A stretch of DNA of 64,000 nt. Source: Phaeosaccion multiseriatum. Its lineage: Eukaryota; Protista; Ochrophyta, other classes. Under the pieces are notes generated by a model. That model saw only the letters and a program-made list of their open reading frames with translations. It did not search any database and was not told where the DNA came from. The stretch is taken from the NCBI GenBank assembly GCA_965112735.1, contig OZ218957.1, forward strand, positions 1 to 64,000. Direction: 5' to 3'. Positions 1 through 61,759 of this stretch are shown one piece after another. Positions within the stretch are counted from its first letter, which is position 1; every line of letters starts with the position of its first letter. The position numbers and the translations under genes are program-made.

Positions 1-3000
1 AACCCTAACCCTAACCCTAACCCTAACCCTAACCCTAACCCTAACCCTAACCCTAACCCTAACCCTAACCCTAACCCTAACCCTAACCCTAACCCTAACC
101 CTAACCCTAACCCTAACCCTAACCCTAACCCTAACCCTAACCCTAACCCTAACCCTAACCCTAACCCTAACCCTAACCCTAACCCTAACCCTAACCCTAA
201 CCCTAACCCTAACCCTAACCCTAACCCTAACCCTAACCCTAACCCTAACCCTAACCCTAACCCTAACCCTAACCCTAACCCTAACCCTAACCCTAACCCT
301 AACCCTAACCCTAACCCTAACCCTAACCCTAACCCTAACCCTAACCCTAACCCTAACCCTAACCCTAACCCTAACCCTAACCCTAACCCTAACCCTAACC
401 CTAACCCTAACCCTAACCCTAACCCTAACCCTAACCCTAACCCTAACCCTAACCCTAACCCTAACCCTAACCCTAACCCTAACCCTAACCCTAACCCTAA
501 CCCTAACCCTAACCCTAACCCTAACCCTAACCCTAACCCTAACCCTAACCCTAACCCTAACCCTAACCCTAACCCTAACCCTAACCCTAACCCTAACCCT
601 AACCCTAACCCTAACCCTAACCCTAACCCTAACCCTAACCCTAACCCTAACCCTAACCCTAACCCTAACCCTAACCCTAACCCTAACCCTAACCCTAACC
701 CTAACCCTAACCCTAACCCTAACCCTAACCCTAACCCTAACCCTAACCCTAACCCTAACCCTAACCCTAACCCTAACCCTAACCCTAACCCTAACCCTAA
801 CCCTAACCCTAACCCTAACCCTAACCCTAACCCTAACCCTAACCCTAACCCTAACCCTAACCCTAACCCTAACCCTAACCCTAACCCTAACCCTAACCCT
901 AACCCTAACCCTAACCCTAACCCTAACCCTAACCCTAACCCTAACCCTAACCCTAACCCTAACCCTAACCCTAACCCTAACCCTAACCCTAACCCTAACC
1001 CTAACCCTAACCCTAACCCTAACCCTAACCCTAACCCTAACCCTAACCCTAACCCTAACCCTAACCCTAACCCTAACCCTAACCCTAACCCTAACCCTAA
1101 CCCTAACCCTAACCCTAACCCTAACCCTAACCCTAACCCTAACCCTAACCCTAACCCTAACCCTAACCCTAACCCTAACCCTAACCCTAACCCTAACCCT
1201 AACCCTAACCCTAACCCTAACCCTAACCCTAACCCTAACCCTAACCCTAACCCTAACCCTAACCCTAACCCTAACCCTAACCCTAACCCTAACCCTAACC
1301 CTAACCCTAACCCTAACCCTAACCCTAACCCTAACCCTAACCCTAACCCTAACCCTAACCCTAACCCTAACCCTAACCCTAACCCTAACCCTAACCCTAA
1401 CCCTAACCCTAACCCTAACCCTAACCCTAACCCTAACCCTAACCCTAACCCTAACCCTAACCCTAACCCTAACCCTAACCCTAACCCTAACCCTAACCCT
1501 AACCCTAACCCTAACCCTAACCCTAACCCTAACCCTAACCCTAACCCTAACCCTAACCCTAACCCTAACCCTAACCCTAACCCTAACCCTAACCCTAACC
1601 CTAACCCTAACCCTAACCCTAACCCTAACCCTAACCCTAACCCTAACCCTAACCCTAACCCTAACCCTAACCCTAACCCTAACCCTAACCCTAACCCTAA
1701 CCCTAACCCTAACCCTAACCCTAACCCTAACCCTAACCCTAACCCTAACCCTAACCCTAACCCTAACCCTAACCCTAACCCTAACCCTAACCCTAACCCT
1801 AACCCTAACCCTAACCCTAACCCTAACCCTAACCCTAACCCTAACCCTAACCCTAACCCTAACCCTAACCCTAACCCTAACCCTAACCCTAACCCTAACC
1901 CTAACCCTAACCCTAACCCTAACCCTAACCCTAACCCTAACCCTAACCCTAACCCTAACCCTAACCCTAACCCTAACCCTAACCCTAACCCTAACCCTAA
2001 CCCTAACCCTAACCCTAACCCTAACCCTAACCCTAACCCTAACCCTAACCCTAACCCTAACCCTAACCCTAACCCTAACCCTAACCCTAACCCTAACCCT
2101 AACCCTAACCCTAACCCTAACCCTAACCCTAACCCTAACCCTAACCCTAACCCTAACCCTAACCCTAACCCTAACCCTAACCCTAACCCTAACCCTAACC
2201 CTAACCCTAACCCTAACCCTAACCCTAACCCTAACCCTAACCCTAACCCTAACCCTAACCCTAACCCTAACCCTAACCCTAACCCTAACCCTAACCCTAA
2301 CCCTAACCCTAACCCTAACCCTAACCCTAACCCTAACCCTAACCCTAACCCTAACCCTAACCCTAACCCTAACCCTAACCCTAACCCTAACCCTAACCCT
2401 AACCCTAACCCTAACCCTAACCCTAACCCTAACCCTAACCCTAACCCTAACCCTAACCCTAACCCTAACCCTAACCCTAACCCTAACCCTAACCCTAACC
2501 CTAACCCTAACCCTAACCCTAACCCTAACCCTAACCCTAACCCTAACCCTAACCCTAACCCTAACCCTAACCCTAACCCTAACCCTAACCCTAACCCTAA
2601 CCCTAACCCTAACCCTAACCCTAACCCTAACCCTAACCCTAACCCTAACCCTAACCCTAACCCTAACCCTAACCCTAACCCTAACCCTAACCCTAACCCT
2701 AACCCTAACCCTAACCCTAACCCTAACCCTAACCCTAACCCTAACCCTAACCCTAACCCTAACCCTAACCCTAACCCTAACCCTAACCCTAACCCTAACC
2801 CTAACCCTAACCCTAACCCTAACCCTAACCCTAACCCTAACCCTAACCCTAACCCTAACCCTAACCCTAACCCTAACCCTAACCCTAACCCTAACCCTAA
2901 CCCTAACCCTAACCCTAACCCTAACCCTAACCCTAACCCTAACCCTAACCCTAACCCTAACCCTAACCCTAACCCTAACCCTAACCCTAACCCTAACCCT

Positions 3001-6000
3001 AACCCTAACCCTAACCCTAACCCTAACCCTAACCCTAACCCTAACCCTAACCCTAACCCTAACCCTAACCCTAACCCTAACCCTAACCCTAACCCTAACC
3101 CTAACCCTAACCCTAACCCTAACCCTAACCCTAACCCTAACCCTAACCCTAACCCTAACCCTAACCCTAACCCTAACCCTAACCCTAACCCTAACCCTAA
3201 CCCTAACCCTAACCCTAACCCTAACCCTAACCCTAACCCTAACCCTAACCCTAACCCTAACCCTAACCCTAACCCTAACCCTAACCCTAACCCTAACCCT
3301 AACCCTAACCCTAACCCTAACCCTAACCCTAACCCTAACCCTAACCCTAACCCTAACCCTAACCCTAACCCTAACCCTAACCCTAACCCTAACCCTAACC
3401 CTAACCCTAACCCTAACCCTAACCCTAACCCTAACCCTAACCCTAACCCTAACCCTAACCCTAACCCTAACCCTAACCCTAACCCTAACCCTAACCCTAA
3501 CCCTAACCCTAACCCTAACCCTAACCCTAACCCTAACCCTAACCCTAACCCTAACCCTAACCCTAACCCTAACCCTAACCCTAACCCTAACCCTAACCCT
3601 AACCCTAACCCTAACCCTAACCCTAACCCTAACCCTAACCCTAACCCTAACCCTAACCCTAACCCTAACCCTAACCCTAACCCTAACCCTAACCCTAACC
3701 CTAACCCTAACCCTAACCCTAACCCTAACCCTAACCCTAACCCTAACCCTAACCCTAACCCTAACCCTAACCCTAACCCTAACCCTAACCCTAACCCTAA
3801 CCCTAACCCTAACCCTAACCCTAACCCTAACCCTAACCCTAACCCTAACCCTAACCCTAACCCTAACCCTAACCCTAACCCTAACCCTAACCCTAACCCT
3901 AACCCTAACCCTAACCCTAACCCTAACCCTAACCCTAACCCTAACCCTAACCCTAACCCTAACCCTAACCCTAACCCTAACCCTAACCCTAACCCTAACC
4001 CTAACCCTAACCCTAACCCTAACCCTAACCCTAACCCTAACCCTAACCCTAACCCTAACCCTAACCCTAACCCTAACCCTAACCCTAACCCTAACCCTAA
4101 CCCTAACCCTAACCCTAACCCTAACCCTAACCCTAACCCTAACCCTAACCCTAACCCTAACCCTAACCCTAACCCTAACCCTAACCCTAACCCTAACCCT
4201 AACCCTAACCCTAACCCTAACCCTAACCCTAACCCTAACCCTAACCCTAACCCTAACCCTAACCCTAACCCTAACCCTAACCCTAACCCTAACCCTAACC
4301 CTAACCCTAACCCTAACCCTAACCCTAACCCTAACCCTAACCCTAACCCTAACCCTAACCCTAACCCTAACCCTAACCCTAACCCTAACCCTAACCCTAA
4401 CCCTAACCCTAACCCTAACCCTAACCCTAACCCTAACCCTAACCCTAACCCTAACCCTAACCCTAACCCTAACCCTAACCCTAACCCTAACCCTAACCCT
4501 AACCCTAACCCTAACCCTAACCCTAACCCTAACCCTAACCCTAACCCTAACCCTAACCCTAACCCTAACCCTAACCCTAACCCTAACCCTAACCCTAACC
4601 CTAACCCTAACCCTAACCCTAACCCTAACCCTAACCCTAACCCTAACCCTAACCCTAACCCTAACCCTAACCCTAACCCTAACCCTAACCCTAACCCTAA
4701 CCCTAACCCTAACCCTAACCCTAACCCTAACCCTAACCCTAACCCTAACCCTAACCCTAACCCTAACCCTAACCCTAACCCTAACCCTAACCCTAACCCT
4801 AACCCTAACCCTAACCCTAACCCTAACCCTAACCCTAACCCTAACCCTAACCCTAACCCTAACCCTAACCCTAACCCTAACCCTAACCCTAACCCTAACC
4901 CTAACCCTAACCCTAACCCTAACCCTAACCCTAACCCTAACCCTAACCCTAACCCTAACCCTAACCCTAACCCTAACCCTAACCCTAACCCTAACCCTAA
5001 CCCTAACCCTAACCCTAACCCTAACCCTAACCCTAACCCTAACCCTAACCCTAACCCTAACCCTAACCCTAACCCTAACCCTAACCCTAACCCTAACCCT
5101 AACCCTAACCCTAACCCTAACCCTAACCCTAACCCTAACCCTAACCCTAACCCTAACCCTAACCCTAACCCTAACCCTAACCCTAACCCTAACCCTAACC
5201 CTAACCCTAACCCTAACCCTAACCCTAACCCTAACCCTAACCCTAACCCTAACCCTAACCCTAACCCTAACCCTAACCCTAACCCTAACCCTAACCCTAA
5301 CCCTAACCCTAACCCTAACCCTAACCCTAACCCTAACCCTAACCCTAACCCTAACCCTAACCCTAACCCTAACCCTAACCCTAACCCTAACCCTAACCCT
5401 AACCCTAACCCTAACCCTAACCCTAACCCTAACCCTAACCCTAACCCTAACCCTAACCCTAACCCTAACCCTAACCCTAACCCTAACCCTAACCCTAACC
5501 CTAACCCTAACCCTAACCCTAACCCTAACCCTAACCCTAACCCTAACCCTAACCCTAACCCTAACCCTAACCCTAACCCTAACCCTAACCCTAACCCTAA
5601 CCCTAACCCTAACCCTAACCCTAACCCTAACCCTAACCCTAACCCTAACCCTAACCCTAACCCTAACCCTAACCCTAACCCTAACCCTAACCCTAACCCT
5701 AACCCTAACCCTAACCCTAACCCTAACCCTAACCCTAACCCTAACCCTAACCCTAACCCTAACCCTAACCCTAACCCTAACCCTAACCCTAACCCTAACC
5801 CTAACCCTAACCCTAACCCTAACCCTAACCCTAACCCTAACCCTAACCCTAACCCTAACCCTAACCCTAACCCTAACCCTAACCCTAACCCTAACCCTAA
5901 CCCTAACCCTAACCCTAACCCTAACCCTAACCCTAACCCTAACCCTAACCCTAACCCTAACCCTAACCCTAACCCTAACCCTAACCCTAACCCTAACCCT

Positions 6001-7824
6001 AACCCTAACCCTAACCCTAACCCTAACCCTAACCCTAACCCTAACCCTAACCCTAACCCTAACCCTAACCCTAACCCTAACCCTAACCCTAACCCTAACC
6101 CTAACCCTAACCCTAACCCTAACCCTAACCCTAACCCTAACCCTAACCCTAACCCTAACCCTAACCCTAACCCTAACCCTAACCCTAACCCTAACCCTAA
6201 CCCTAACCCTAACCCTAACCCTAACCCTAACCCTAACCCTAACCCTAACCCTAACCCTAACCCTAACCCTAACCCTAACCCTAACCCTAACCCTAACCCT
6301 AACCCTAACCCTAACCCTAACCCTAACCCTAACCCTAACCCTAACCCTAACCCTAACCCTAACCCTAACCCTAACCCTAACCCTAACCCTAACCCTAACC
6401 CTAACCCTAACCCTAACCCTAACCCTAACCCTAACCCTAACCCTAACCCTAACCCTAACCCTAACCCTAACCCTAACCCTAACCCTAACCCTAACCCTAA
6501 CCCTAACCCTAACCCTAACCCTAACCCTAACCCTAACCCTAACCCTAACCCTAACCCTAACCCTAACCCTAACCCTAACCCTAACCCTAACCCTAACCCT
6601 AACCCTAACCCTAACCCTAACCCTAACCCTAACCCTAACCCTAACCCTAACCCTAACCCTAACCCTAACCCTAACCCTAACCCTAACCCTAACCCTAACC
6701 CTAACCCTAACCCTAACCCTAACCCTAACCCTAACCCTAACCCTAACCCTAACCCTAACCCTAACCCTAACCCTAACCCTAACCCTAACCCTAACCCTAA
6801 CCCTAACCCTAACCCTAACCCTAACCCTAACCCTAACCCTAACCCTAACCCTAACCCTAACCCTAACCCTAACCCTAACCCTAACCCTAACCCTAACCCT
6901 AACCCTAACCCTAACCCTAACCCTAACCCTAACCCTAACCCTAACCCTAACCCTAACCCTAACCCTAACCCTAACCCTAACCCTAACCCTAACCCTAACC
7001 CTAACCCTAACCCTAACCCTAACCCTAACCCTAACCCTAACCCTAACCCTAACCCTAACCCTAACCCTAACCCTAACCCTAACCCTAACCCTAACCCTAA
7101 CCCTAACCCTAACCCTAACCCTAACCCTAACCCTAACCCTAACCCTAACCCTAACCCTAACCCTAACCCTAACCCTAACCCTAACCCTAACCCTAACCCT
7201 AACCCTAACCCTAACCCTAACCCTAACCCTAACCCTAACCCTAACCCTAACCCTAACCCTAACCCTAACCCTAACCCTAACCCTAACCCTAACCCTAACC
7301 CTAACCCTAACCCTAACCCTAACCCTAACCCTAACCCTAACCCTAACCCTAACCCTAACCCTAACCCTAACCCTAACCCTAACCCTAACCCTAACCCTAA
7401 CCCTAACCCTAACCCTAACCCTAACCCTAACCCTAACCCTAACCCTAACCCTAACCCTAACCCTAACCCTAACCCTAACCCTAACCCCTAACCCTAACCC
7501 TAACCCTAACCCTAACCCTAACCCTAACCCTAACCCTAACCCTAACCCTAACCCTAACCCTAACCCTAACCCTAACCCTAACCCTAACCCTAACCCTAAC
7601 CCTAACCCTAACCCTAACCCTAACCCTAACCCTAACCCTAACCCTAACCCTAACCCTAACCCTAACCCTACCCTAACCCTAACCCTAACCCTAACCCTAA
7701 CCCTAACCCTAACCCTAACCCTAACCCTAACCCTAACCCTAACCCTAACCCTAACCCAAACCCTAACCCTAACCCTAACCCTAACCCTAACCCTAACCCT
7801 AACCCTAACCCTAACCCTAACCCT
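1..7824. repeat. Telomere, (CCCTAA)n / (TTAGGG)n, ~1300 units
   Basis: Near-perfect CCCTAA array from base 1, C-rich strand on + as expected for a left chromosome end. Variant units occur only proximally: CCCCTAA ~7487, CCCTA ~7670, CCCAAA ~7757. Confidence 0.99.
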
Positions 7825-10800
7825 CGTTCGAGGCCTCTAGACCCGAGAGCCAGTCGAGATCCACTTCGTCCGAGGCCTCTAGACCCGGGATCCAGTTGAG
7901 ATCCACTTCGTTCGAGGCCTCTAGACCCGAGAGCCAGTCGAGATCCACTTCGTTCGAGGCCTCTAGTCCCCACAGCCAGTTGAGATCCACTTCGTTCGAG
8001 GCCTCTAGACCCGGGATCCAATCGAGATCCACTTCGTTCGAGGCCTCTAGACCCGAGAGCCAGTTGAGATCCACTTCGTTCGAGGCCTCTAGACCCGGGA
8101 TCCAGTTGAGATCCACTTCGTTCGAGGCCTCTAGACCCGGGATCCAGTTGAGATCCACTTCGTTCGGGGCCTCTAGACCCGGGATCCAGTTGAGATCCAC
8201 TTCGTTCGAGGCCTCTAGACCCGGGATGCAGTTGAGATCCACTTCGTTCGAGGCCTCTAGACCCGGGATCCAGTTGAGATCCACTTCGTTCGAGGCCTCT
8301 AGACCCGGGATCCAGTTGAGATCCACTTCGTTCGAGGCCTCTAGACCCGGGATGCAGTTGAGATCCACTTCGTTCGAGGCCTCTAGACCCGGGATGCAGT
8401 TGAGATCCACTTCGTTCGAGGCCTCTAGACCCGGGATCCAGTTCAGATCCACTTCGTTCGAGGCCTCTAGACCCGAGAGCCAGTTGAGATCCACTTCGTT
8501 CGAGGCCTCTAGACCCGAGAGCCAGTCGAGATCCACTTCGTTCGAGGCCTCTAGACCCGAGAGCCAGTTGAGATCCACTTCGTTCGAGGCCTCTAGACCC
8601 GAGAGCCAGTCGAGATCCACTTCGTTCGAGGCCTCTAGACCCGGGATCCAGTTGAGATCCACTTCGTTCGAGGCCTCTAGACCCGGGATCCAGTTGAGAT
8701 CCACTTCGTTCGAGGCCTCTAGACCCGGGATCCAGTTCAGATCCACTTCGTTCGAGGCCTCTAGACCCGAGAGCCAGTTGAGATCCACTTCGTTCGAGGC
8801 CTCTAGACCCGAGAGCCAGTCGAGATCCACTTCGTTCGAGGCCTCTAGACCCGAGAGCCAGTTGAGATCCACTTCGTTCGAGGCCTCTAGACCCGAGAGC
8901 CAGTCGAGATCCACTTCGTTCGAGGCCTCTAGACCCGAGAGCCAGTTGAGATCCACTTCGTTCGAGGCCTCTAGACCCGGGATCCAGTTGAGATCCACTT
9001 CGTTCGAGGCCTCTAGACCCGGGATCCAGTTGAGATCCACTTCGTTCGAGGCCTCTAGACCCGAGAGCCAGTCGAGATCCACTTCGTTCGAGGCCTCTAG
9101 ACCCGAGATCCAGTTGAGATCCACTTCGTTCGAGGCCTCTAGACCCGAGAGCCAGTTGAGATCCACTTCGTTCGAGGCCTCTAGACCCGAGAGCCAGTTG
9201 AGATCCACTTCGTTCGAGGCCTCTAGAACCGGGATCCAGTTGAGATCCACTTCGTTCGAGGCCTCTAGACCCGAGAGCCAGTTGAGATCCACTTCGTTCG
9301 AGGCCTCTAGACCCGAGAGCCAGTTGAGATCCACTTCGTTCGAGGCCTCTAGACCCGGGATCCAGTTGAGATCCACTTCGTTCGAGGCCTCTAGACCCGG
9401 GATCCAGTTGAGATCCACTTCGTTCGAGGCCTCTAGACCCGGGATCCAGTTGAGATCCACTTCGTTCGAGGCCTCTAGACCCGGGATCCAGTTGAGATCC
9501 ACTTCGTTCGAGGCCTCTAGACCCGGGATCCAGTTGAGATCCACTTCGTTCGAGGCCTCTTGACCCGGGATCCAGTTGAGATTCACTTCGTTCGAGGCCT
9601 CTAGACCCGAGAGCCAGTCGAGATCCACTTCGTTCGAGGCCTCTAGACCCGGGATCCAGTTGAGATCCACTTCGTTCGAGGCCTCTAGACCCGGGATCCA
9701 GTTGAGATCCACTTCGTTCGAGGCCTCTAGACCCGGGATCCAGTTGAGATCCACTTCGTCCGAGGCCTCTAGACCCGGGATCCAGTTGAGATCCACTTCG
9801 TTCGAGGCCTCTAGACCCGAGAGCCAGTCGAGATCCACTTCGTCCGAGGCCTCTAGACCCGGGATCCAGTTGAGATCCACTTCGTTCGAGGCCTCTAGAC
9901 CCGAGAGCCAGTCGAGATCCACTTCGTTCGAGGCCTCTAGACCTGAGAGCCAGTTGAGATCCACTTCGTTCGAGGCCTCTAGACCCGAGCGCCGGTCGAG
10001 ATCCACTTCGTTCGAGGCCTCTAGACCCGAGAGCCAGTTGAGATCCACTTCGTTCGAGGCCTCTAGACCCGGGATCCAGTTGAGATCCACTTCGTTCGAG
10101 GCCTCTAGACCCGAGAGCCAGTCGAGATCCACTTCGTTCGAGGCCTGTAGACCCGAGAGCCAGTTGAGATCCACTTCGTTCGAGGCCTCTAGACCCGGGA
10201 TCCAGTTGAGATCCACTTCGTTCGAGGCCTCTAGACCCGGGATCCAGTTGAGATCCACTTCGTTCGAGGCCTCTAGACCCGAGAGCCAGTCGAGATCCAC
10301 TTCGTTCGAGGCCTCCAGACCCGAGAGCCAGTTGAGATCCACTTCGTTCGAGGCCTCTAGACCCGAGAGCCAGTCGAGATCCACTTCGTTCGAGGCCTCT
10401 AGACCCGAGAGCCAGTTGAGATCCACTTCGTTCGAGGCCTCTAGACCCGAGAGCCAGTCGAGATCCACTTCGTTCGAGGCCTCTAGACCCGAGAGCCAGT
10501 TGAGATCCACTTCGTTCGAGGCCTCTAGACCCGGGATCCAGTTGAGATCCACTTCGTTCGAGGCCTCTAGACCCGGGATCCAGTTGAGATCCACTTCGTT
10601 CGAGGCCTCTAGACCCGGGATCCAGTCGAGATCCACTTCGTTCGAGGCCTCTAGACCCGAGAGCCAGTTGAGATCCACTTCGTTCGAGGCCTCTAGACCC
10701 GGGATCCAGTTGAGATCCACTTCGTTCGAGGCCTCTAGACCCGGGATCCAGTTGAGATCCACTTCGTTCGAGGCCTCTAGACCCGGGATCCAGTTGAGAT

Positions 10801-11519
10801 CCACTTCGTTCGAGGCCTCTAGACCCGGGAGCCAGTAGAGATCCACTTCGTCCGAGGCCTCTAGACCCGAGAGCCAGTTGAGATCCACTTCGTCCGATGC
10901 CTCTAGACCCGGGATCCAGTCGAGTTCCACTTCGTCCGAGGCCTCTAGACCCGAGAGCCAGTTGAGATCCACTTCGTTCGAGGCCTCTAGACCCGGGTTC
11001 CAGTCGAGCTCCACTTCGTTCGAGGCCTCTAGACCCGAGAGCCAGTTGAGATCCACTTCGTCCGCGGCCTCTAGACCCGGGACCCAGTCGAGATCCACTT
11101 CGTCCGAGGCCTCTAGACCCGGGATCCAGTTGAGATCCACTTCGTCCCAGGCCTCTAGACCCGAGAGCCAGTTGAGATTCACTTCCCCCGAGGCCTCTAG
11201 ACCCGAGAGCCAGTTGAGATCCACTTCGTCCGAGGCCTCTAGACCCGGGATCCAGTCGAGATCCACTTCGTCCGAGGCCTCTAGACCCAAGAGCCAGTTG
11301 AGATCCACTTCGTTCGAGGCCTCTAGACCCGGGATCCAGTTGAGATCCACTTCGTCTGAGGCCTCTAGACCCGGGATCCAGTCGAGATCCACTTCGTCCG
11401 AGGCCTCTAGACCTGGGATCCAGTCGAGATCCACTTCGTCCGAGGCCTCTAGACCCGAGAGCCTGTCGAGATCCACTTCGTCTGAGCCCTCTAGACCCGG
11501 GATTCAGTCGAGATCCACT
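7824..11519. repeat. Subtelomeric 42-bp satellite, ~88 tandem copies
   Basis: Consensus GAGATCCACTTCGTTCGAGGCCTCTAGACCCG(GGAT/AGAG)CCAGT(T/C). The 14-aa periodicity in the ORF track confirms the 42-bp unit. Proximal copies (10830-11519) are more diverged. Confidence 0.97.
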
Positions 11520-11545
11520 AACCTTACCGGCCCATGGAAGGGATT

Positions 11546-12087
11546 GTTCAACCCTTCCGTGTCGAAATCAGGCCCAGATTGCCCACCGGGGCCCACAGAT
11601 GGGCCTGTTCAACCCCACAGAACAGAGTGTACAACCACACCGAGCACATCAGAGACGCATCACAGTCTCATGACGACCATGGCGGGACCATTTCAACCCC
11701 ACCGGCCCAGAGAAAGCACAGTTCAACCCTCCCGTGCCGAAATCGGGCGCCAGATGACCCACCTGGGCTCACAGATGGGCCATTTCAACCCCACAGAACA
11801 GAGTGTACAACCACACCGACAACCCCAGAGACGCATCCCAGACTCATGACGACCATGGTGGGACCATTTCAACCCCGCTGGCCCACAGAAAGCACAGTTC
11901 AACCCTCCCGGGTCGAAATCGGGCGCCAGATGGCCCACCGGGGCCCACAGATGGGCCATTTCAACCCCACAGAACAGTGTGTACAACCACACCGGGAACA
12001 CCACAGACGCATCACAGACTCATTCCGACCACGGTGGGACCATTTCAACTCCACTGGCCCAGACAAAGCGCAGTTCAACCCTCCTGT
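11546..12087. repeat. ~176-bp tandem repeat, 3 full copies plus the start of a 4th
   Basis: GTTCAACCC unit starts at 11546, 11721, 11897 and 12073. Shared blocks include CACAGATGGGCC, CCCCACAGAACAG, GTGTACAACCACACCG and GGGACCATTTCAAC. Confidence 0.92.
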
Positions 12088-12711
12088 TCGGCCCCGTGCA
12101 CGCCTAGCGGCCTAGGCTCTAGGCCGCTAGGCCGCTCTAGGCCGCTCACTTTTCAGCCCTAGGCGGCCTATAGCCCGCCTCTAGGCAGCCTCCCAGTGAC
12201 CGTGGGCGCGTGCGTGGTGCCGCCCAGCCAGTGGGTAGCAGCACACCTGTAGGCCTGCACTCCTCGTAGGGCCAGCGAGGCGGAAAGAGACAACACGAAC
12301 CAAGTCTACTCCTCACTTATCGCATACATTTGCTTAAAACTGACGACACTTGGGCGGGTTCCGGGCCAGCCCAGGGGCATATGATCGACCCCTGACACAC
12401 TATCCGCTATCCGCTATCGCCGGCGCCAGCCGGCGCGCTATCCGCTATCGGCCGGCGCCAGCCGGCACGCTATCCGCTATCGGCCCCCGGGGGCGCCGAT
12501 AGCGCGCTATCGAGAATGTGGGCGATAGTGTGTCAGGGGTCGAATATGAGCATATTCCCGCCCTGGACCTGCGCCTAGTTGGCGTCTGCCCTAGGCCGCG
12601 GGCCTCCGGCCCCCGCCTAGCGGCCTATAAATAGGCCGAGGGCCTACGGCCCTCGCTAGGCCGGGCAATTTTCCAAAATAAGCCTAGGCCGCTAGGCGTG
12701 CACGGGGCCGA
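12088..12711. mobile_element. MITE A (624 bp), 31-bp perfect TIR, 6-bp TSD TCCTGT
   Basis: TCGGCCCCGTGCACGCCTAGCGGCCTAGGCT at 12088 with its exact reverse complement at 12681-12711. TCCTGT at 12082-12087 and 12712-12717. Many subterminal CCTAG/CTAGG motifs; no ORF. Confidence 0.92.
12385..12543. mobile_element. MITE B (159 bp) nested in MITE A, 20-bp TIR, 6-bp TSD ATATGA
   Basis: TCGACCCCTGACACACTATC ... GATAGTGTGTCAGGGGTCGA, with ATATGA at 12379-12384 and 12544-12549. Internal GCTATC repeats and a GC hairpin. Confidence 0.93.
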
Positions 12712-12896
12712 TCCTGTGGGATGAAAAGGTGTTGTATATTACACCCTTAAGTGCCATCTATGGTTGTCTAAAAGTAATGAAAAGGCGTCCCCAGGCTGGA
12801 ATTCATATTCTTAACGTGACAATTCTTCCGCCGCCGCCCTATTCTGTCAATGAATTGTCCCCACCTCTGATATCACCCTTGAGCGCTTAGTAGTGT

Positions 12897-12956: not shown

Positions 12957-14192
12957 ATGGCCAATGCGAGGAAGGCGGTCGCGCTTTGGTGCCTGTGTGT
13001 CACTGCTATTTGCGCAGTGACTACCGATGTAGGTGGAGAGGAGTACCAGTCCGAAGAAGGTAGCCCGGTCGGATACTTGCAAGAACCACCTGGTTGCCCC
13101 GGCTACGGAATGTATGCGTCGCACGCCGAGACCGTCTATGACGTGGTCATTGTAACTCGCTATTGGGGTGACTTGGAGATTGGTGTAGAACGCACCCTCT
13201 CGAGATACTTTGATGTGAGGCTCACGGAGTCCACACTTCCCGAGCATCAAGCAGTAACAACGAACGAAGGAGGGGAGGTTATGCTTCCACGACTCCCAAA
13301 CCGGCCCGTCATGATGGTGTTCTCAATTCCAGAACACCTTGAGGACCTCATCACGTTAATTACTGCCCTGAAGGACCAGATGACGGACGAAGACCGGGAG
13401 GAGCTCGCCCGCCGGAGGGCGGCAAGTAGAGGTCCTGCACTAGTCGTGGGACACAGGGATATACATCTCTCGAAGGTCAGAACGGAAATACTTGCAATCC
13501 AAGCTCTTGATTATTTCGATTCCATTACGTACGAGGCAATGGACGTTGATATGGATGGAGTGACTCCACATGCGATGGGGCTCTCCGCCCCATACATCCC
13601 CCGCTGCGGTGAGAAGAATATTATGAATGCCATTGAAAGCGCGAACGTCGCCAATAAGTCCAACAGTATCCTCGGAGCCTGGGGAAAGATGTGGCCTCAA
13701 CTTGATAGCATGCGAGATCGGAAGAGTGCAAAGGAGTTCGTGGAGGCGCACGAGTGGGTGGACCATGGGCTAGTGTCTACCGAAGCGTGGTGGGCTCATT
13801 TAGGGACATACAGGTTCATCATTTCGCCGACTGGGTTTGGAATTCAATCGCCGAAGACCTGGGAGGCCATTCTCATGCAGACCATTCCTATTGTTTTGGC
13901 AAACCCAACCTATAGCGGTCTCAAAGACATGGGATTTCCCATAGTGGTCGTGCACGACTGGAACGAGATCACAGAGCCGAAGCTGGACGAGTGGTGGGCT
14001 GAGCTGTCGCCCAAGCTTCCTCTGGCTCGGTGGATGTTCAACCCCACGGTCTGGGCAAAATACTTCACGGCCCCGGTCATGAACCGGCCTCCAGACATCA
14101 TGGACTACCTCCAGAATGACGTGTTTTGTCTTCATTCATTTGGGGCTGTCGAGGTCGAGCAGCTGGACAGACGTTCGAGGGTAGGTGTCTGA
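12957..14192 (+). CDS. Intronless secretory-pathway protein, exostosin/GT47-like glycosyltransferase domain (411 aa)
   Basis: Clean, non-repetitive ATG-TGA ORF with a hydrophobic N-terminal signal (AVALWCLCVTAICAV). C-terminal YRFIISPTGFGIQSPKTWEAILMQTIPIV...PIVVVHDWNEI resembles the exostosin-family F.l.P.G.G..s.R..EA....IPV motif. Confidence 0.7.
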   Translation: MANARKAVALWCLCVTAICAVTTDVGGEEYQSEEGSPVGYLQEPPGCPGYGMYASHAETVYDVVIVTRYWGDLEIGVERTLSRYFDVRLTESTLPEHQAVTTNEGGEVMLPRLPNRPVMMVFSIPEHLEDLITLITALKDQMTDEDREELARRRAASRGPALVVGHRDIHLSKVRTEILAIQALDYFDSITYEAMDVDMDGVTPHAMGLSAPYIPRCGEKNIMNAIESANVANKSNSILGAWGKMWPQLDSMRDRKSAKEFVEAHEWVDHGLVSTEAWWAHLGTYRFIISPTGFGIQSPKTWEAILMQTIPIVLANPTYSGLKDMGFPIVVVHDWNEITEPKLDEWWAELSPKLPLARWMFNPTVWAKYFTAPVMNRPPDIMDYLQNDVFCLHSFGAVEVEQLDRRSRVGV

Positions 14193-17651: not shown

Positions 17652-20600
17652 GTGTGTATATGTGTGTACACGGGTGTGTGTGTGCGGGCATGAAAGTGAC
17701 CGACACCAATTGCCTCACTAAATAAAGAGGGGCGCGGAGGGCACAAGGGAGCAGCCCAGTGCCACTCTCGAGTTTCAGTTTGTTGGCTCACCTCCAGGAT
17801 CTTGAGCTCCACAGCGGGCATGGTGAGCAAGCTGCCCACGCTAAAGTCGTCAAGCACAAAGGGCAGCCCTGTCTCCTTGTTCGTGAAGCTGGGGAGGGAG
17901 GGAGGGAGGGAGGGAGAGATAGATGTTGATCGAAGGTCAACAAACGGAAACGGAAACTGACCCCCACATACGCCTGACGCACCGGCCCCTCTTGAGGTAT
18001 GTCCCTGCCGCCACGCCGGAGTTGCTCCCCCTGGGGTGCTGCACATACACGGCGAGGGAGTCGTCGGAGGGGTACAAGCAAACCACATACTCCGTCCCTG
18101 CAGAGCTGTACGAAGTAGAGCCCGAGGTCAGGATGGCCTGGGGGGAGGGGAGGGGTGGTGGTCTCGTGTTCGGTAACACTGCAAGAGTTTCTTCTTATTG
18201 CGTTGGTCGGATGATAGCTTTGGCACTCCCCTCTTCCCTCCTCTCTCTCTGTCCCTCTCACGCATCCGCACATACACACTCACACCGGATGCGCACGCGC
18301 ACACGCACACGCACACGCACGCACGCACGCAGGCACACACACGCAGGCAGGCATACACAAACACACATCCTACGCACATCCAACACGCACACACGCACCT
18401 TGAAGCGGAAGACAATGCCCTGATTCTCGCTGGCCTGGAGGAAGCGTCCGAGAAGGTTCCCCGGCCGCTTGGGGTGTAGCAGCGAATCCACAGGGTGTTT
18501 GGCGGGTCTCGGCACCGTCTTGTTGTGCTGGGCCCGCTCTATGAAGGCAGCTAAGTCGCCCTGCCCTTGCCTTCGCATGTCTAGTCCTACCACCTCGGCC
18601 CACCTGCGTGTGCGTGTGTTGGTGGTGGGGGGGGATGTGGGGGTGTGTGAGTGACAGCGCAGCGTCACACGCACATACATGCACACGTACCCACACATCC
18701 ACATTCGCTCACTCACGCACGCACGCACGCACGCACTCACTCACGCCCTCACTCACTCACTCATTCACTCACGCACTCACCACTGATACGTGCTCTCGTT
18801 GGCGCCGCAGATGGTGAGGGTCTTTCCCCCAATGCGAACTGTCTGACCGACCCTAAAGTCCATCAGCTGCAGAGCTTCCGCGCTACCCTCTCTCCCTGCC
18901 CCACCCCAACCTCGACCCCCTCGACTGTGGCTCTTCCCCCCCCGGGGGGCTCCGGCGGCGGCCAGGGAAGAGGAAGAGGCAAGGCAAGCGGGAGAGGTGT
19001 TGTTGTTGTTGTTGCTCCCCTCGATTGAAGCCCCGATGGAATCGACACAGGTTTGCACGACGTCCTCCTTGGGTACCACTTGCCGCTTGAGAACGATAGG
19101 ACTGAGGAATGGGATGGGAGGGAGGGAGGGAGGGAGGGAGGGAGGGAGGGAGGGAGGGAGGGAGGGAGGGAGGGAGGGAGGGAGGGAGGGAGGGAGGGAG
19201 GGAGGGAGGGAGGGAGGGAGGGAGGGAGGGAGGGAGGGAGGGAGGGAGGGAGGGAGGGAGGGAGGGAGGGAGGGAGGGAGGGAGGGAGGGAGGGAGGGAG
19301 GGAGGGAGGGAGGGAGGGAGGGAGGGAGGGAGGGAGGGAGGGAGGGAGGGAGGGAGGGAGGGAGGGAGGGAGGGAGGGAGGGAGGGAGGGAGGGAGGGAG
19401 GGAGGGAGGGAGGGAGGGAGGGAGGGAGGGAGGGAGGGAGGGAGGGAGGGAGGGAGGGAGGGAGGGAGGGAGGGAGGGAGGGAGGGAGGGAGGGAGGGAG
19501 GGAGGGAGGGAGGGAGGGAGGGAGGGAGGGAGGGAGGGAGGGAGGGAGGGAGGGAGGGAGGGAGGGAGGGAGGGAGGGAGGGAGGGAGGGAGGGAGGGAG
19601 GGAGGGAGGGAGGGAGGGAGGGAGGGAGGGAGGGAGGGAGGGAGGGAGGGAGGGAGGGAGCGAGAGAGGGAGGGAGGGAGAGGGAGGGAGGGACAAAGGA
19701 CGGGAGAGTAAGACAGGTATGGAGATAGAGAGCAGCGACGGACAGAAAGGGACGTATGGAGAGGGTAGACTTAGGGGTGGATTGATTTCTCAGAGAGCAT
19801 TAGAAGGCAGCAGAGGGCAGGAAAACGAACGAGGGGGGGCATGTGAGCATCTCACAGAGAAGCTTTGCTGTCCTTGTCGCGTTGGCTCTTTGGGAGCGTC
19901 GCCCGCACGAACTGTCCGCGTGCGATCCTGCTGCTCTCCGCCCTGCCTGCCTTGCTTCTCGTACGCATGCACGCACTCACTCACGCGCGCACACACTCAC
20001 TCACTCAATCCGCAGCTCTCTTATTGACTCACTCACTCACTCACTCACTCACGTACCAGGGTGTCGTGAAGTGATTCCCGCCCCTTGTGTCAACGAGCTC
20101 TCGCATCTCCAGCGAGCCATCTGTGAGGAAGTATTGGAGGGTGTACAGGTGCAGTGAGCCCTGCTCCGTGTCGCGATCGTCCCAGTGAGCATAGTACTGT
20201 AACGCCTCCTTCCTGCTGCTGGACAAGCTGACTCGGTAACCCCCCCTGTGGCCACCGGAGAAGGACGAGTATAGGCTGTCCACGCTCGGCTGCTGCTGAC
20301 CCCCACCTCCACCCCAGCCGCTGTTCAGAGAGGAGATGGAGGGGCAGCCATCAGCCCCTGCTGCCATAAGGAAGCAGCTGTCGCCGCCCTCCACCTCTCC
20401 TCCCCCGCCTTCGCCTCCTCCGAAGCTTCCCTTCCCGTTGCCCACGTGCCCGCCCCCGTTGTTGTGCTGGGAGGGGTTTCGGGGCACGTGCTTGGTAGGG
20501 CTGCCGATGGCCAGGCCGACGCTGGCAGATGGCACTTCAAGGGTCATCTGTCCCGCCCGCTCGGGATGGTCCCTCCTGTTCGCGAAAAGGAGCAGGGAAG

Positions 20601-29409: not shown

Positions 29410-32400
29410 GAGGAGGAGGAGGAGGAGGAGGAGGAGGAGGAGGAGGACAAGGGGGGTTGGGGAGGGGGGCGGGAGGAGGGGGGGGTGACGAAAGGGACCC
29501 TGAATGGACTGCGAGTATGCCACCACCACCCCCCGTGCAATTGCGCGGAGAGCAGAGGCACAACCCTCTTTATGCCCCAGGGGGGAGTGGCCCAGGAGGT
29601 CGCAGGAGGAGAGAAGATAACCTCTCAATCAACAGCAATATGAGCAGCGCAACTGCGAGTAGCGGTGATGACACGGAAGAGAGCATTCACTTCTCAGTGG
29701 GTAGTCCCGCTGCCGGAGTGCGAGCAGTTGATGGCAGTGGAGGGGCGGGGGGGGGGGAGGGTCCGATGGCGGCGGCAGCAGGCGTTTCGCCGGGGGGGAT
29801 TAATATCAACGGAGAAGGAGGTGAGGAAGGGAGGGAGGGAGGGGAGAGAGCAGGTCGCGGAAGAGCCCACCCTACTTTCACCCTAATTTCTTGTTCCTTT
29901 TGAGATCTAACGTTCTTCGCTATGGAGGGAGGGAGAGAGGGAAGCGCGAAGGGGGGAGGGGGGGAGGGAGGAGGGGAAGAAAGGGAGGGAGGGGACACGT
30001 ATCACAGCATGTCATGCATTCCCCCTACACCACTGACGTGCACCACTGATGTGCACCACTGACGTACACCACTGACGTGCCCTTTTCTCCCCCGTCCTCC
30101 GCTATCCCTCCTTCCTTCTCCGATTACGACAGACGACCGCAGACGAATACAAGCAGGGAACGGGGAAGCTCAACAACAAGCTCAACAACAAGCTCAAAAC
30201 CGCCTCCAAAACCAAGTGCAACTTGACGATCGGACGGCGGCTGCCATTGCCGCTGCCTTACGCGCCCCTTCCGCGAGGGGGGCTAACAGACGCCCCACAG
30301 GGGGAGGGGTTGGCAGAGCTGACGGAGTAGGGCAGGGGCGGGGGGGGGGGCTGGGGGAGGAGCAGGAGCAGGAGCAGGAGGGGGAGGGGGAGGAGGAGGA
30401 CGCGTATCCTTTTGGGGTGCCCCCCGTACCTCACATTGTGGTGCTGCATCACGGTTTCCACGGCACGCCTTTCGACATGAGGCTTATTAGGAACTATCTT
30501 CGGCTACTGCTTCCGACGTGCCACATACTCAATGCAGAGTGTAATCAGGTGAGTGGGTGGGTGGCTGGGTGGCTGGGTGAGTGGCTGGCTGGGTGGGTGA
30601 GTGGGTTGGTGAGTGGGTGGGTGAGTGGGTGAGTGGGTGAGTGGGTGAGTGGGTGGGTGAGTGGGTGAGTGTGTGGTAAGGAGTCACTGAGTGTGTCCCC
30701 TCAACCCATCCACTGCCATCCCAGGTGGACCCCAACGCGTCGATCCGCACGATGGGGGAGCGCCTCGCGGAGGAATTCAACACTTTCGTCCTCGGAAAGT
30801 GCCCGGAGCTCGCTGACCCGCAGGTAAGTCAATGGATGGGTGTGTAAGTGTGACTGTGAGTGTGTGTTTGTGTGTGTGCATGTATGTGCGTGTATATATA
30901 TTTGTGCGTGCGTGTGTGTATTGTATCCAGTCCTTCTTCTGTGGAGCGACAACTCGAACTTACACTCCCCCCTCAACTAGAGCTCAAACTCAGCACTCAA
31001 ACTTCAGCTTTAAACTGAAACTCAAACTCCTGTATGCAGATGGAGGGCCGAGTGACGTTCGTTGGGCACAGTGCAGGTGCGGTGATCCTCCGTGCGGCGC
31101 TGACCGTTGCGTCTCTGCGGCCCTTCCTCTCCAAGATGCACGCCTTCATCTCCATCTCCGGCCCCCACCTGGGGACGCTATACAGGTAAGGGAGGGGAGG
31201 GGATGGCAGTGGATGGATGGATGGCAGTGGGCGGGTGGCAGTGGATGGATCGCCACACACACACACACACACATACGCACACGCACACTTTCTAGTCTCT
31301 CCTCCCTCCACACAAACATCCTCCAGCTCCACCGTAGTGCAAACGGGCATATGGGCGATGAAGAAGTGGAGCCGCTCCTCCATTCTCAACGAGCTGTGCC
31401 TCACTGACGCGGCGAGTGGCAATGTGGCGGACTCTCTGCTGTACTGGCTCACCACGCAGGTCAGTCAATCAGTCAATCAGTCAATCAGTCATCAGTGAGT
31501 GAGTGACTGAGTCAAGAGCAAGCCTCCCTTCCCGTGTGCCTCTTCTCCCCACCGATATGCCTCTACTCAGCCCTCTTTCGAGTGGACCTAAGCTTTGTGG
31601 TGCTTGTGATGTGCTTCCCATATGCCTGCACTCACCACCCTCCATGTGCCTGCATCCCCATACGCCTTTACTCAGCCCTCCTTCGAATACTTCAGCTACG
31701 TGGTGCTTGTATCTGCCCGCAAGGACGAGTATGTGCCGATGCACAGCGCGAGGATTCAATGCTGCGAGGCCGCCATCAAGGACGCGCGGAAGGGGAACGC
31801 CACAGGTGAGGGAGGTTTTCATGTTGAAGTTGAAGTTTATGTAACCTCATCAACATCGACATCGAGCCCAAAAATACAATGGGGTTGATATCGAAGGTCT
31901 GTGCTTCTTCGCGAGGCGGGCTGAGGGAGGGCAGAAAAGGAAGGCCCGAAACCTTGACACATCATTGTCCAGGATAGACTGTGGGCTGTGGGATGTATGA
32001 CCAACTGCTGTGGCTTGTAGGCGGTGGACTCCAAACTGGCCTTCTTACGGAATCAGTCTGATTCTCTTCGTTTACGACCGCTCCTTGCTTCCGTTGTCCC
32101 TTCCTCCCTTCCTCCCGTCCTTCCTCCCACCCTTCCTTCCTTCCTTCCTTCCTTCCTTCCTTTCTTCCTAAATCCGTCCGAATCCTAACCCCCTCTATCC
32201 CCCCCCCCCCCCAAGGGCGGCGTATGGCTGAGATGGTGCAGAACCTGCTCGGCCCCCTGGACAAGTGCCGTGTGTTCCGCATGAACCTCTACTCGCTCTT
32301 CGAGGAGGCAAACTTCGACACCATGATTGGCAGAGCGGGTTAGTCGTAAGGCAACGATGGGCAGAGCGGGGTAGTCGTAAGGCAACGATTGGCAGAGCGG

Positions 32401-42900: not shown

Positions 42901-43099
42901 GGGTTGAGTAGTGAGTGAGTGCAGGTGAGTATGTGTCTGTCGAACTTAAAAACTGCTCCCCAGAATGCCCCACCGACTGCCCAACTGCCTGGCGGCCCGA
43001 ATCAGCTTCCAAGCAACCTAACAACCAACACACACACATACCATGCATACGCACACACAAAAACACACAAACACACAAGCGCACACACATGCACACACA

Positions 43100-43152
<53 letters not shown>

Positions 43153-59700: not shown

Positions 59701-59934
59701 TCGCTCCCCGCTGTCCAAAATCAGTCCCTCGAATGGCTCTGCGTCCCCCTCCGCGTCCCCCCCTGCGGGGATTGCTCGGCTGATGATTCTCCTGCCTTCC
59801 CTAAAGCGTTGGTCGTATTTGAAACTCACAGTTGGGAATTTAAATTAAATCCAGTTTCAGTTTCTTCCCCGACCCCACACTTGCTCGGTCGAACTTGCAA
59901 CCTTCCAATTTCCTTTTGAGTCAATATATTACCC

Positions 59935-60010
59935 CACACCATCGCCCACATTCCCGATAGCGGATAGCGCGCCGGCGATAGCGGATAGCGGATAGTGTAT
60001 CAGGGGTTGA
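59935..60010 (-). mobile_element. Internally deleted MITE B copy, reverse orientation
   Basis: CACACCATCGCCCACATTCCCGATAGCGGATAGC...GATAGTGTATCAGGGGTTGA matches the reverse complement of 12385-12543. One end is degenerate and there is no clean TSD. Confidence 0.8.
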
Positions 60011-60045
60011 TCCTCTCCCCTAGACTAGCTCTCCCCGAACAAAAG

Positions 60046-60381
60046 TCGGCTCCCCGCAGGGCGGGCTTCTCGGGCTCCGAGCTTCTGGGCCATAGTCCAG
60101 CCAGCGCGCTATCCGACCCCCCGGGGCCCGATAGCGCGCTATCGAGAATGTGGGCGATAGTGTATCAGGGGTTGACCATAGCCCCCTCCAGGCTGCGGGC
60201 TTCTGCGCCGCAGGCCAGCGGTTTGGGCTTCAGGCTTCTCAGGGGGGCTCAGGGGGGCAGGGGGGAGAGATTTATGCAGGCTTCTGGCCCCAGGCCAGCC
60301 CCGGGCTTCTTGCTTTCGGCTTCTTGCGCCTCAGGCTTCTTCTGCTTATCGGGGCGCCAGAGAAGCCCTGCGGGGAGCCGA
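60046..60381. mobile_element. MITE C (336 bp), TIR TCGGCTCCCCGCAGGGC
   Basis: TCGGCTCCCCGCAGGGC at 60046 and GCCCTGCGGGGAGCCGA ending 60381, with ~10 internal GGCTTC(T) motifs. Flanks CAAAAG / CAAG(CAAAAG) are only an imperfect TSD. Confidence 0.75.
60096..60175 (+). mobile_element. 80-bp one-ended MITE B derivative nested in MITE C, 6-bp TSD CCATAG
   Basis: CCATAG at 60090-60095 and 60176-60181. The right half matches MITE B (CGATAGCGCGCTATCGAGAATGTGGGCGATAGTGT.TCAGGGGT.GA); the left end keeps only TC. Confidence 0.85.
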
Positions 60382-61759
60382 CAAGCAAAAGGGCGTGTAA
60401 CCGGCCTCTCGTGGGCCCCAGAGACAGAGACACAGAGACTCATACGTGCCCCCTTGGTCGAAGTTGTACTGTACATGTATTCGGTTTATCTATCCCCGAA
60501 TACAAATGATGTCACGCATTCCCTTGTCATCTTCCCTTCCCCTCGTATCTGCTTCCCTTCGGGCATGTCTTTACTCTCATCCACTGAGAACAGTCCGACA
60601 TTCCCCCGTCTCTTTCCCTCCTTTAACACTAAGGCTTTCTCCGCCTACTGAGTGCTCGCCCCAACGACTGCCACAGCCAGACGGCCACCGACCGCAGCCA
60701 AGACCACAGCCAACTCAGCCCACCTTGCTCCACCGGCCTGCTTCGCATAGCTAGAATATAACCCCTTACCCTGCCCCCGCCCGCCGCACCCCCATCCCCT
60801 CTTAGTTGATTCCTATAAGTCGATATATGTCTCCCCCCCCATCCCCCTCTCGCCCCTGTTCACCCTGTTCTCCCGTCGTCGTCACTGTCAGCCCACACAC
60901 CCGCCCCGCACCCCATTCGTGGGGAGATCCCTTTGCTTGCTGCCCTCGCACGATCGCATCCTCGCCACTCCCATCATTCCCGCCACGCTCACGCTCTCAT
61001 CGGCCTCGGCCACACTCCCTCCTTCCTTCCCTCCCTCCCTCCCTCCCTCCGTCCTTCCCTCCCTCCCTCCCTCCTTCCCAGCCAGGGTCGAGGGAGAGTA
61101 GGGCGGGGCAGGCGGGGGCTGGGCTAGCTATGTTGCCACTGAATTCAGCCTTCCTTCCTTCCCATGACCATCGTGTCGTGCCATGTTCTGTCCCACCGCC
61201 TGTGCACGCCGTAACCCCGCACCCAGAAACCGCTTCCAATGACTTACTAGAGGCCGCTTCCAATGCCTTACGATGACCGACGCAATCAATCCTTGCTCCC
61301 CTTCTCTTGCTATTCCCTGCGTCTGTGCTGTGGTCCCAAGCGACTGTTGCAAGGCGAGCCAGTGACTGCCATCGCAATTTAAAGCATGGCACTCCATGGC
61401 TCGACTTACAACTTGTGGTTCCACTGTAAGTCAGGAAGCGGGCTCCGAGTCGGCGTCCAACGCTTGTCTTGGCTCCCCTCCCAACCCCCCCTGCGGACGC
61501 CGAGTGCCTCAGCTGCTCTCGCCCCCCCACCCGAGAAAACGCGTTCTTTTCTAAATAAGCGTATGTACGCAAACGCAAAAGCAAAAGCAAAAGCAGCAGT
61601 TGGGGTACGGCCCGGTCGAACGTCCTCCAGCACAGCATGGCTGCAGTCACAGAGAGATGTCGTTGCTTCGAAGGCTCAGCACGGCCCACTCAGCTCCTTC
61701 GAGACCACAGCCCCGCCCCCGCCCCGCCCTGCGTCATGAAACTCTTCGTCATTGACATA

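What the first reader, a model, noticed from the sequence alone, without database searches (positions are those of the whole stretch)
12082..12717. DNA-transposon group with 5'-TCG...CGA-3' termini and 6-bp TSDs
Seen: three different miniature elements (A TCGGCCCC, B TCGACCCC, C TCGGCTCC) share TCG termini, each with its own multimeric subterminal word (CCTAG, GCTATC, GGCTTC). Three insertions have exact 6-bp TSDs (TCCTGT, ATATGA, CCATAG). From memory, 6-bp TSDs occur with Polinton (AG ends), IS3EU (TAY ends), hAT6 (YA ends) and Dada (no TIR); none has TC..GA ends. Inference: non-autonomous members of an uncharacterised or poorly described transposase lineage. Perfect TIRs and TSDs imply recent activity.
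Basis: partly seen in the sequence, partly recalled or inferred. Interest (0 to 1): 0.85.

Follow-up and report, generated by a model that had tools for sequence, protein, structure and literature searches.

The report
Miniature transposons with six-base duplications
Three families of tiny, non-coding jumping-gene derivatives sit near a chromosome end of a brown-alga-like organism. They are real and probably young, but their enzyme gene is not in reach, so the claim that they mark a new transposon lineage stays open.

Summary
Element A (12088-12711) has a perfect 31-bp terminal inverted repeat (TIR) and the exact 6-bp duplication TCCTGT on both sides. Element B1 (12385-12543) is nested inside A, with a 20-bp TIR and ATATGA on both sides. 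Element C (60046-60381) has a 17-bp TIR and holds a truncated B copy, B3, flanked by CCATAG. A fifth, degenerate B copy (B2) lies at 59921-60010.

An exact abutting 6-mer has a null rate of 0.002 per site in this window. A, B1 and C are the only convincing TIR structures found. All three begin TCG(G/A)C(C/T)CC. Each has its own subterminal word, enriched 60- to 260-fold over background.

- B2 and B3 end in TCAA, so "TCG" is not universal.
- C has no abutting duplication; its left 6-mer recurs 4 nt beyond the right end.

No transposase is in the window, and no relative turned up in any collection scanned. The host looks like an ochrophyte alga that is absent from the databases.

These are non-autonomous cut-and-paste elements. 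The pairing of a 6-bp duplication with TC..GA ends matches no catalogued superfamily signature. But termini vary within superfamilies, so "new lineage" is untested. Interest is moderate to low.

The parts
12082..12087 (.). Left copy of the 6-bp target-site duplication of A (TCCTGT). It lies in the last unit of the 176-bp subtelomeric repeat.
12088..12711 (+). Element A: 624 bp including nested B1 (459 bp of its own). No ORF inside it exceeds 56 aa. CCTAG-type words are clustered in both subterminal regions.
12088..12118 (+). Left terminal inverted repeat of A (31 nt, perfect, starts TCGGCCCC)
12681..12711 (-). Right terminal inverted repeat of A (31 nt, perfect)
12712..12717 (.). Right copy of the duplication of A (TCCTGT)
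12379..12384 (.). Left copy of the duplication of B1 (ATATGA), inside A
12385..12543 (+). Element B1: 159 bp, perfect 20-nt TIR starting TCGACCCC. It holds 8 GCTATC words and a 32-bp internal tandem repeat. It folds as a long hairpin (z = -6.2).
12544..12549 (.). Right copy of the duplication of B1 (ATATGA)
59921..60010 (-). Element B2: a short B-family copy in reverse orientation. One end is intact (TCAACCCC...) and the other is degenerate. It has no convincing duplication.
60040..60045 (.). 6-mer abutting the left end of C (CAAAAG)
60046..60381 (+). Element C: 336 bp including nested B3 (250 bp of its own). It has a perfect 17-nt TIR starting TCGGCTCC and 9 GGCTTC words.
60090..60095 (.). 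Left copy of the duplication of B3 (CCATAG), inside C
60096..60175 (+). Element B3: an 80-bp truncated B-family copy. One terminal repeat is intact (TCAACCCC type) and most of the other is missing.
60176..60181 (.). Right copy of the duplication of B3 (CCATAG)
60386..60391 (.). Second CAAAAG, 4 nt beyond the right end of C. Possibly a displaced duplication of C.
   Evidence: (p about 0.024)

Best explanation
A, B (three copies) and C are three families of small, non-coding, non-autonomous cut-and-paste DNA transposons (MITE-like). They lie in the subtelomeric region of a chromosome of an ochrophyte alga.

Shown:
- perfect terminal inverted repeats;
- exact 6-bp direct duplications at three insertions;
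- nesting of B copies inside A and inside C;
- a shared terminal octamer;
- family-specific short words packed into the subterminal regions;
- no coding capacity.

Inferred:
- Each family is moved in trans by a DDE-type transposase encoded elsewhere in the genome.
- The enzymes are related, because they share the same terminal bases and the same 6-bp staggered target cut.
- They read different subterminal words as binding sites. This would explain why the octamer is shared while the words differ.

My best guess for the enzyme, at about 0.3, is the integrase-related clade (IS3EU/GingerRoot, Ginger, Polinton). That clade makes 4-6 bp duplications, and its ends run T..A at the outermost bases (TG..CA, TA..TA). 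TC..GA would be a new variant of that theme. The confidence given below is for the first claim only: non-autonomous TIR transposons with 6-bp duplications.
For: - TIRs of 31, 20 and 17 nt are perfect. None of that length appeared in 20 simulations.
- Three exact abutting 6-bp duplications, against a null of 0.0021 each.
- B-family copies at three places in 52 kb.
- B1 interrupts A, and B3 interrupts C, each with its own duplication.
- All bona fide TIR structures in the window share TCG(G/A)C(C/T)CC.
- Subterminal words are 60- to 260-fold enriched.
- ORFs inside A are at most 56 aa.
- No transposase domain in 108 ORFs of the window.
- Literature for the enzyme guess: 6-bp duplications are rare and typical of integrase-related elements (PMC6839031; PMC10045372).
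Against: - Only five copies were seen, all in one 64-kb window.
- Two of them (B2, C) lack a clean abutting duplication.
- A and C are single-copy here.
- No empty site, no autonomous copy and no relative was found in viral, metagenome or prokaryote collections.
- The enzyme assignment rests on duplication length and two terminal bases alone. IS3EU families are reported to be 'always' TA..TA.
Confidence: 0.82

Rival explanations
1. The elements are non-autonomous members of the hAT superfamily, of a 6-bp-duplication variant comparable to hAT6. The architecture fits: short TIRs plus repeated subterminal binding words.
For: - hAT families with 5, 6, 7 and 8-bp duplications exist (PMC12730594).
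- Short TIRs with multimeric subterminal words are the classic hAT layout (established knowledge; words shown).
- Curated Ectocarpus hAT families have non-canonical ends, TTGGC and CACAC, so odd termini do not exclude hAT.
Against: - hAT6 is reported within an animal hAT lineage.
- The curated brown-alga hAT families make 8-bp duplications.
- TC..GA is not a reported hAT end.
- No hAT transposase is in the window.
Confidence: 0.2
2. The elements belong to a transposase lineage that is not yet catalogued, a new superfamily or deep clade.
For: - The pairing of a 6-bp duplication with TC..GA ends matches none of the signatures found in the papers read.
- It matches none of the 165 curated Ectocarpus models.
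- No similar terminal or subterminal strings occur in that library as held.
- Stramenopile mobile elements are poorly explored.
Against: - There is no protein evidence at all.
- Classification by termini is weak, because termini vary within superfamilies.
- Most unclassified MITEs end up in known superfamilies once their autonomous partner is found (established experience).
Confidence: 0.15
3. These are not mobile elements. They would be chance palindromes, or local rearrangement products of GC-rich low-complexity DNA.
For: The window is full of microsatellites and low-complexity inverted repeats. The bare 8-mer is not enriched.
Against: - The TIRs are complex sequence and perfect over 17-31 nt, with none in simulations.
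- There are three exact abutting duplications.
- Homologous B copies lie 47 kb apart.
- The elements are nested, each nested copy with its own duplication.
Confidence: 0.03

Closest known systems
MITEs (miniature inverted-repeat transposable elements), as a structural class
   Same: Small (159-459 bp), non-coding, with perfect TIRs and flanking duplications. They form hairpins, nest within one another, and lie close to genes: A lies about 245 bp upstream of an ORF.
   Different: GC-rich (63-72%) rather than AT-rich. Copy number is unknown beyond this window. The parent element is unknown.
IS3EU/GingerRoot (integrase-related DNA transposons)
   Same: 6-bp duplications, TIRs, and outermost bases T..A.
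   Different: Reported ends are TA..TA (TAYGG..CCRTA), occasionally TG..CA. Reported TIRs are over 30 bp, up to 100-150 bp. Here the ends are TC..GA and the TIRs are 17-31 bp. No transposase was seen. The group is not listed among Ectocarpus superfamilies.
hAT superfamily, 6-bp variant (hAT6)
   Same: A 6-bp duplication is possible. Short TIRs plus repeated subterminal words.
   Different: Usual ends are of the YA..TR type. hAT6 is described in an animal lineage. Brown-alga hAT families make 8-bp duplications.
Polinton/Maverick
   Same: 6-bp duplication.
   Different: Nothing of that kind is here.
PIF/Harbinger non-autonomous families of Ectocarpus
   Same: Their ends (GGGCC, GACCC, GGCTG and similar) resemble the A, B and C ends once the first two bases (TC) are set aside.
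   Different: They make 3-bp TWA/TNA duplications. Here TC..GA is part of the inverted repeat, and the duplication is 6 bp with no TWA.

Membership tests
MITE / non-autonomous TIR transposon | Terminal inverted repeats | tested here: met
   31, 20 and 17 nt, all perfect
MITE / non-autonomous TIR transposon | Target-site duplication of fixed length | tested here: met
   6 bp, exact, at A, B1 and B3. C is displaced by 4 nt and B2 has none.
MITE / non-autonomous TIR transposon | Small size and no coding capacity | tested here: met
   80-459 bp. ORFs are at most 56 aa. No Pfam transposase in the window.
MITE / non-autonomous TIR transposon | Multiple dispersed copies in the genome | tested here: inconclusive
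   B has three copies at two loci 47 kb apart. A and C are single in the window.
IS3EU/GingerRoot | 6-bp duplication | tested here: met
   definition from PMC10045372
IS3EU/GingerRoot | TA..TA (rarely TG..CA) termini | tested here: not met
   The ends are TC..GA in all copies.
IS3EU/GingerRoot | IS3/IS481-like DDE transposase in autonomous copies | not testable with these tools
   No autonomous copy in the window. The source genome is absent from the collections.
hAT (hAT6) | 8-bp duplication (6 bp in hAT6) | tested here: met
   6 bp. hAT6 is cited in PMC12730594.
hAT (hAT6) | Short TIRs with YA..TR-type ends | tested here: not met
   The ends are TC..GA. However, curated Ectocarpus hAT ends are also atypical.
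hAT (hAT6) | Transposase with a hAT dimerisation domain | not testable with these tools
   No transposase found.
Polinton/Maverick | 6-bp duplication, a 5'-AG terminus, long TIRs, 15-20 kb with polymerase and integrase genes | tested here: not met
   Only the duplication length fits.
Dada | No TIRs; insertion in tRNA or snRNA genes | tested here: not met
   TIRs are present. No tRNA or Rfam family in the window. Definition from PMC3706591.
Helitron | 5'-TC and CTRR-3' ends, 3' hairpin, no duplication, insertion between A and T | tested here: not met
   Only 5'-TC fits. The elements have symmetrical TIRs and 6-bp duplications.
PIF/Harbinger | 3-bp TWA/TNA duplication | tested here: not met
   The flanks are 6-bp repeats without TWA. 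Definition.

The most novel reading that the evidence does not exclude
A, B and C are the non-autonomous tail of an uncatalogued DDE transposon lineage of ochrophyte algae. It would be defined by 6-bp duplications and TC..GA ends, either a deep new branch of the integrase-related clade or a separate superfamily.
Probability: 0.15. Interest if true: 0.6.

Novelty: new variant of a known kind. Interest (0 to 1): 0.35.

Why it matters
Six-base duplications are uncommon among DNA transposons. Mobile elements of stramenopile algae are also poorly catalogued: about a seventh of curated Ectocarpus families are 'DNA/Unknown'.

If the enzyme behind these elements proves distinct, it would add a lineage to the transposon classification. 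It would also give a clean signature for annotating these genomes: the terminal octamer plus 6 bp.

In practical terms, intact nested copies next to a gene at a chromosome end suggest recent activity. That is useful for population markers and for understanding subtelomere turnover.

If the partner turns out to be an ordinary hAT or IS3EU relative, this is routine annotation.

Tried and rejected
1. Autonomous copy in the window. I scanned 108 ORFs of 130 aa or more against Pfam. Only host families came back (BBS2, ankyrin, NUDIX, FAM135, DM10). Other TCG(G/A)C(C/T)CC sites do not extend into TIRs.

2. Relatives elsewhere. The A, B and C terminal patterns gave nothing, or single unpaired chance hits, in viral contigs, metagenome contigs (L001 is an unrelated AT-rich contig) and prokaryote genomes.

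3. Reaching the source genome.
- The exact look-up of the 411-aa ORF failed.
- Its homologue search gave one 31% hit.
- The ankyrin ORF search was swamped by repeats and told nothing.
- The BBS2-bearing ORF gave only weak hits from unnamed clusters.
- Only the NUDIX ORF placed the host, near brown algae.

4. Synteny with Ectocarpus at the NUDIX gene: none. No similar TIR elements in that locus.

5. The curated Ectocarpus library: no 6-bp class and no matching strings. The stored copy of that file is truncated.

6. Sola3 as a 6-bp group. I rejected this from my memory of the 2009 abstract (Sola makes 4 bp). The paper itself is not held. The Ectocarpus Sola entries also show 4 bp.

7. Rfam and tRNA scans: nothing.

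8. Long dispersed repeats: only microsatellites.

Full report
WHAT THE WINDOW IS

Bases 1-7824 are a (CCCTAA)n telomere. A 42-bp satellite follows (88 copies, to 11519), then three units of a 176-bp repeat (11546-12084). The rest is about 59% G+C and full of microsatellites. It carries intron-bearing host genes: BBS2 pieces, a DM10-domain piece, FAM135, a NUDIX gene and an ankyrin gene.

The NUDIX ORF (37510-38376) finds its best relatives in the brown algae Ectocarpus (42% identity over 97% of its length) and Pylaiella, then in diatoms. Together with TTAGGG-type telomeres and flagellar genes, this points to an ochrophyte stramenopile, brown-alga-like. I put that at moderate confidence.

The organism itself is not in the protein collections: no query gave a near-identical hit. 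The window is not human, and no human-like contig was handled.

BBS2 is split over several ORFs. I searched one ORF piece by reference.

THE OBSERVATION

- Element A spans 12088-12711. Its two ends are a perfect 31-nt inverted repeat beginning TCGGCCCC, and TCCTGT abuts both ends.
- Element B1 sits inside A at 12385-12543. It is 159 bp, with a perfect 20-nt inverted repeat beginning TCGACCCC, and ATATGA abuts both ends.
- Element C lies 47 kb away at 60046-60381, with a perfect 17-nt inverted repeat beginning TCGGCTCC.
- B3, a truncated B-family copy, lies inside C at 60096-60175 with CCATAG on both sides.
- B2, another short B copy, lies just upstream at 59921-60010 in reverse orientation.

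The finding's coordinates cover A and B1 only.

CHANCE CONTROLS

- Random site pairs in this window show an exact abutting 6-mer repeat at a rate of 0.0021. Three such cases at boundaries set independently by homology or inverted repeats are far beyond chance.
- Perfect inverted repeats of 17 nt or more within 1 kb number four in the real sequence and zero in each of 20 simulated sequences. The fourth real one is a GGATGG-type low-complexity repeat.
- So A, B1 and C are the only convincing TIR structures, and all three share the same first eight bases at 7 of 8 positions or better.
- The bare 8-mer is not enriched in the window (16 seen, 14 expected). The signal is in the paired, TIR-embedded occurrences.
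CCTAG occurs 17 times in A, against 0.21 per kb of background. GCTATC occurs 8 times in B1, against 0.19 per kb. GGCTTC occurs 9 times in C, against 0.45 per kb. They are concentrated near the ends.

- B2 and B3 both begin TCAACCCC and share a second difference from B1 in the repeat. They form a subfamily, and the first three bases are not always TCG.
- Across the four observed end types, positions 1, 2, 5, 7 and 8 are constant and positions 3, 4 and 6 vary.
- CCATAG flanks a truncated B copy, not C.
- C's own flanks are CAAAAG and CAAGCA, but CAAAAG recurs 4 nt further out on the right (p about 0.02). That may be a displaced duplication.
- B2 has one intact end and one degenerate end, and no significant flank repeat.
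- B3 has one intact end and lacks most of the other, yet keeps both copies of its duplication. The simplest reading is a deletion after insertion.

NOTE FOR THE OPERATORS

B3 is a non-coding relic, not a gene. I flag this in case it counts under the rule on listing breaks.

WHAT IT IS

These are small, non-coding elements. ORFs inside A are at most 56 aa, and B1 folds as a long hairpin with z = -6.2. They have perfect inverted ends and fixed-length duplications, and they insert into one another. That is the anatomy of non-autonomous cut-and-paste DNA transposons.

No transposase domain occurs in any of the 108 ORFs of 130 aa or more, and no long dispersed repeat is present. The enzyme must therefore act in trans from elsewhere.

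The three families share the terminal octamer and the 6-bp stagger but carry different subterminal words. The economical inference is a set of related transposases. Their catalytic sites would recognise the same terminal bases, and their DNA-binding domains would read different words. This step is inferred, not shown.

WHICH SUPERFAMILY

From papers read here:
- 6-bp duplications are called relatively rare. They are found in some LTR elements, Polinton/Maverick, Ginger2 (reports differ) and GingerRoot (PMC6839031).
- IS3EU and GingerRoot form one lineage with 6-bp duplications and ends that are 'always' TA..TA, occasionally TG..CA (PMC10045372).
- IS3EU in rusts ends TAYGG..CCRTA (PMC12730594).
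- hAT makes 8 bp, with 5, 6 and 7-bp variants. hAT6 lies within an animal lineage.
- Zisupton and Dileera make 8 bp. Kyakuja makes 7 bp with CA..TG ends. The CACTA-related clade makes 2-5 bp.
- Dada lacks TIRs and sits in small-RNA genes (PMC3706591).
- Helitrons begin 5'-TC but have CTRR-3' ends and no duplication (PMC3627910).

The curated library of the closest model, Ectocarpus, has duplication classes TA, 2, 3, TTAA, 4, 5, 7, 8 and 9 bp. It has no 6-bp class and no TC..GA ends. Terminal and subterminal strings of A, B and C are absent from the part of that library that is held.

So the signature fits no catalogued group. Two facts weaken the leap to 'new lineage':
- Termini vary within superfamilies. 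Ectocarpus hAT ends are TTGGC and CACAC.
- Ectocarpus alone has 51 'DNA/Unknown' families.

I rank the candidates as follows:
- Integrase-related clade, about 0.3. It makes 4-6 bp spacing and has T..A outermost bases.
- A hAT-like 6-bp variant, about 0.2.
- A truly uncatalogued lineage, about 0.15.
- The remainder is spread over other known superfamilies with atypical duplication length.

HISTORY

B1 interrupts A, and B3 interrupts C, so at least two rounds of insertion occurred at each locus. A and B1 are intact, which fits recent insertion. B2, B3 and perhaps C show later decay.

A sits exactly where the 176-bp array ends. Its left duplication copy lies in the last array unit, and the paralogous units read TCCCGT at that place and carry no element.

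VERDICT

The claim of a new transposase lineage cannot be tested without the source genome. This is a new variant of a known kind, of moderate to low interest.

Noticed in passing
window 1-12084: Complete chromosome end: (CCCTAA)n to 7824, then a 42-bp satellite of 88 copies at 94% identity, then three 176-bp units. Each 176-bp unit contains TTCAACCCC motifs whose 8 bases equal the B2/B3 terminal octamer. There is no wider similarity to B, so this is probably coincidence.
   Followed up: partly
window 12957-14192 (+): The first gene after the satellites, about 245 bp downstream of A, is a 411-aa ORF with a signal-peptide-like start. Residues 271-347 match exostosin/GT47-type glycosyltransferase chains in the PDB (8q8i, 8asa, and 8avq 'AO75L'; E = 2e-7). 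From memory, at least the last is a chlorella-virus protein. Only one distant homologue (31%) exists among 5.8 billion proteins.
   Followed up: partly
window 33733-34531: A 25-bp minisatellite, about 32 copies at 97% identity.
   Followed up: no
window 19111-19693: A (GGGA)n array of 146 copies. Similar AGGG/CCCT, GT/CA, GGA and GTGAGG tracts recur through the window and generate most of the inverted and direct repeat calls.
   Followed up: no
window 30698-31248: A 16-25 nt imperfect inverted repeat built from a GGATGGCAGTGG-type motif. It has no duplication and does not look like an element.
   Followed up: partly
window 37510-38376 (+) and 41203-43693 (-): A single-exon NUDIX gene whose best relatives are in brown algae (42-46% identity), then diatoms. 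A BBS2 gene lies in several short exons, and there is a DM10-domain hit elsewhere. This places the host among flagellate-forming ochrophytes. There is no synteny with the Ectocarpus NUDIX locus.
   Followed up: partly
window 12613-12632 (inside A): A's right arm contains a short palindrome centred on TATAAATA, a TATA-box-like string facing the downstream ORF. Whether A contributes promoter activity is unknown.
   Followed up: no
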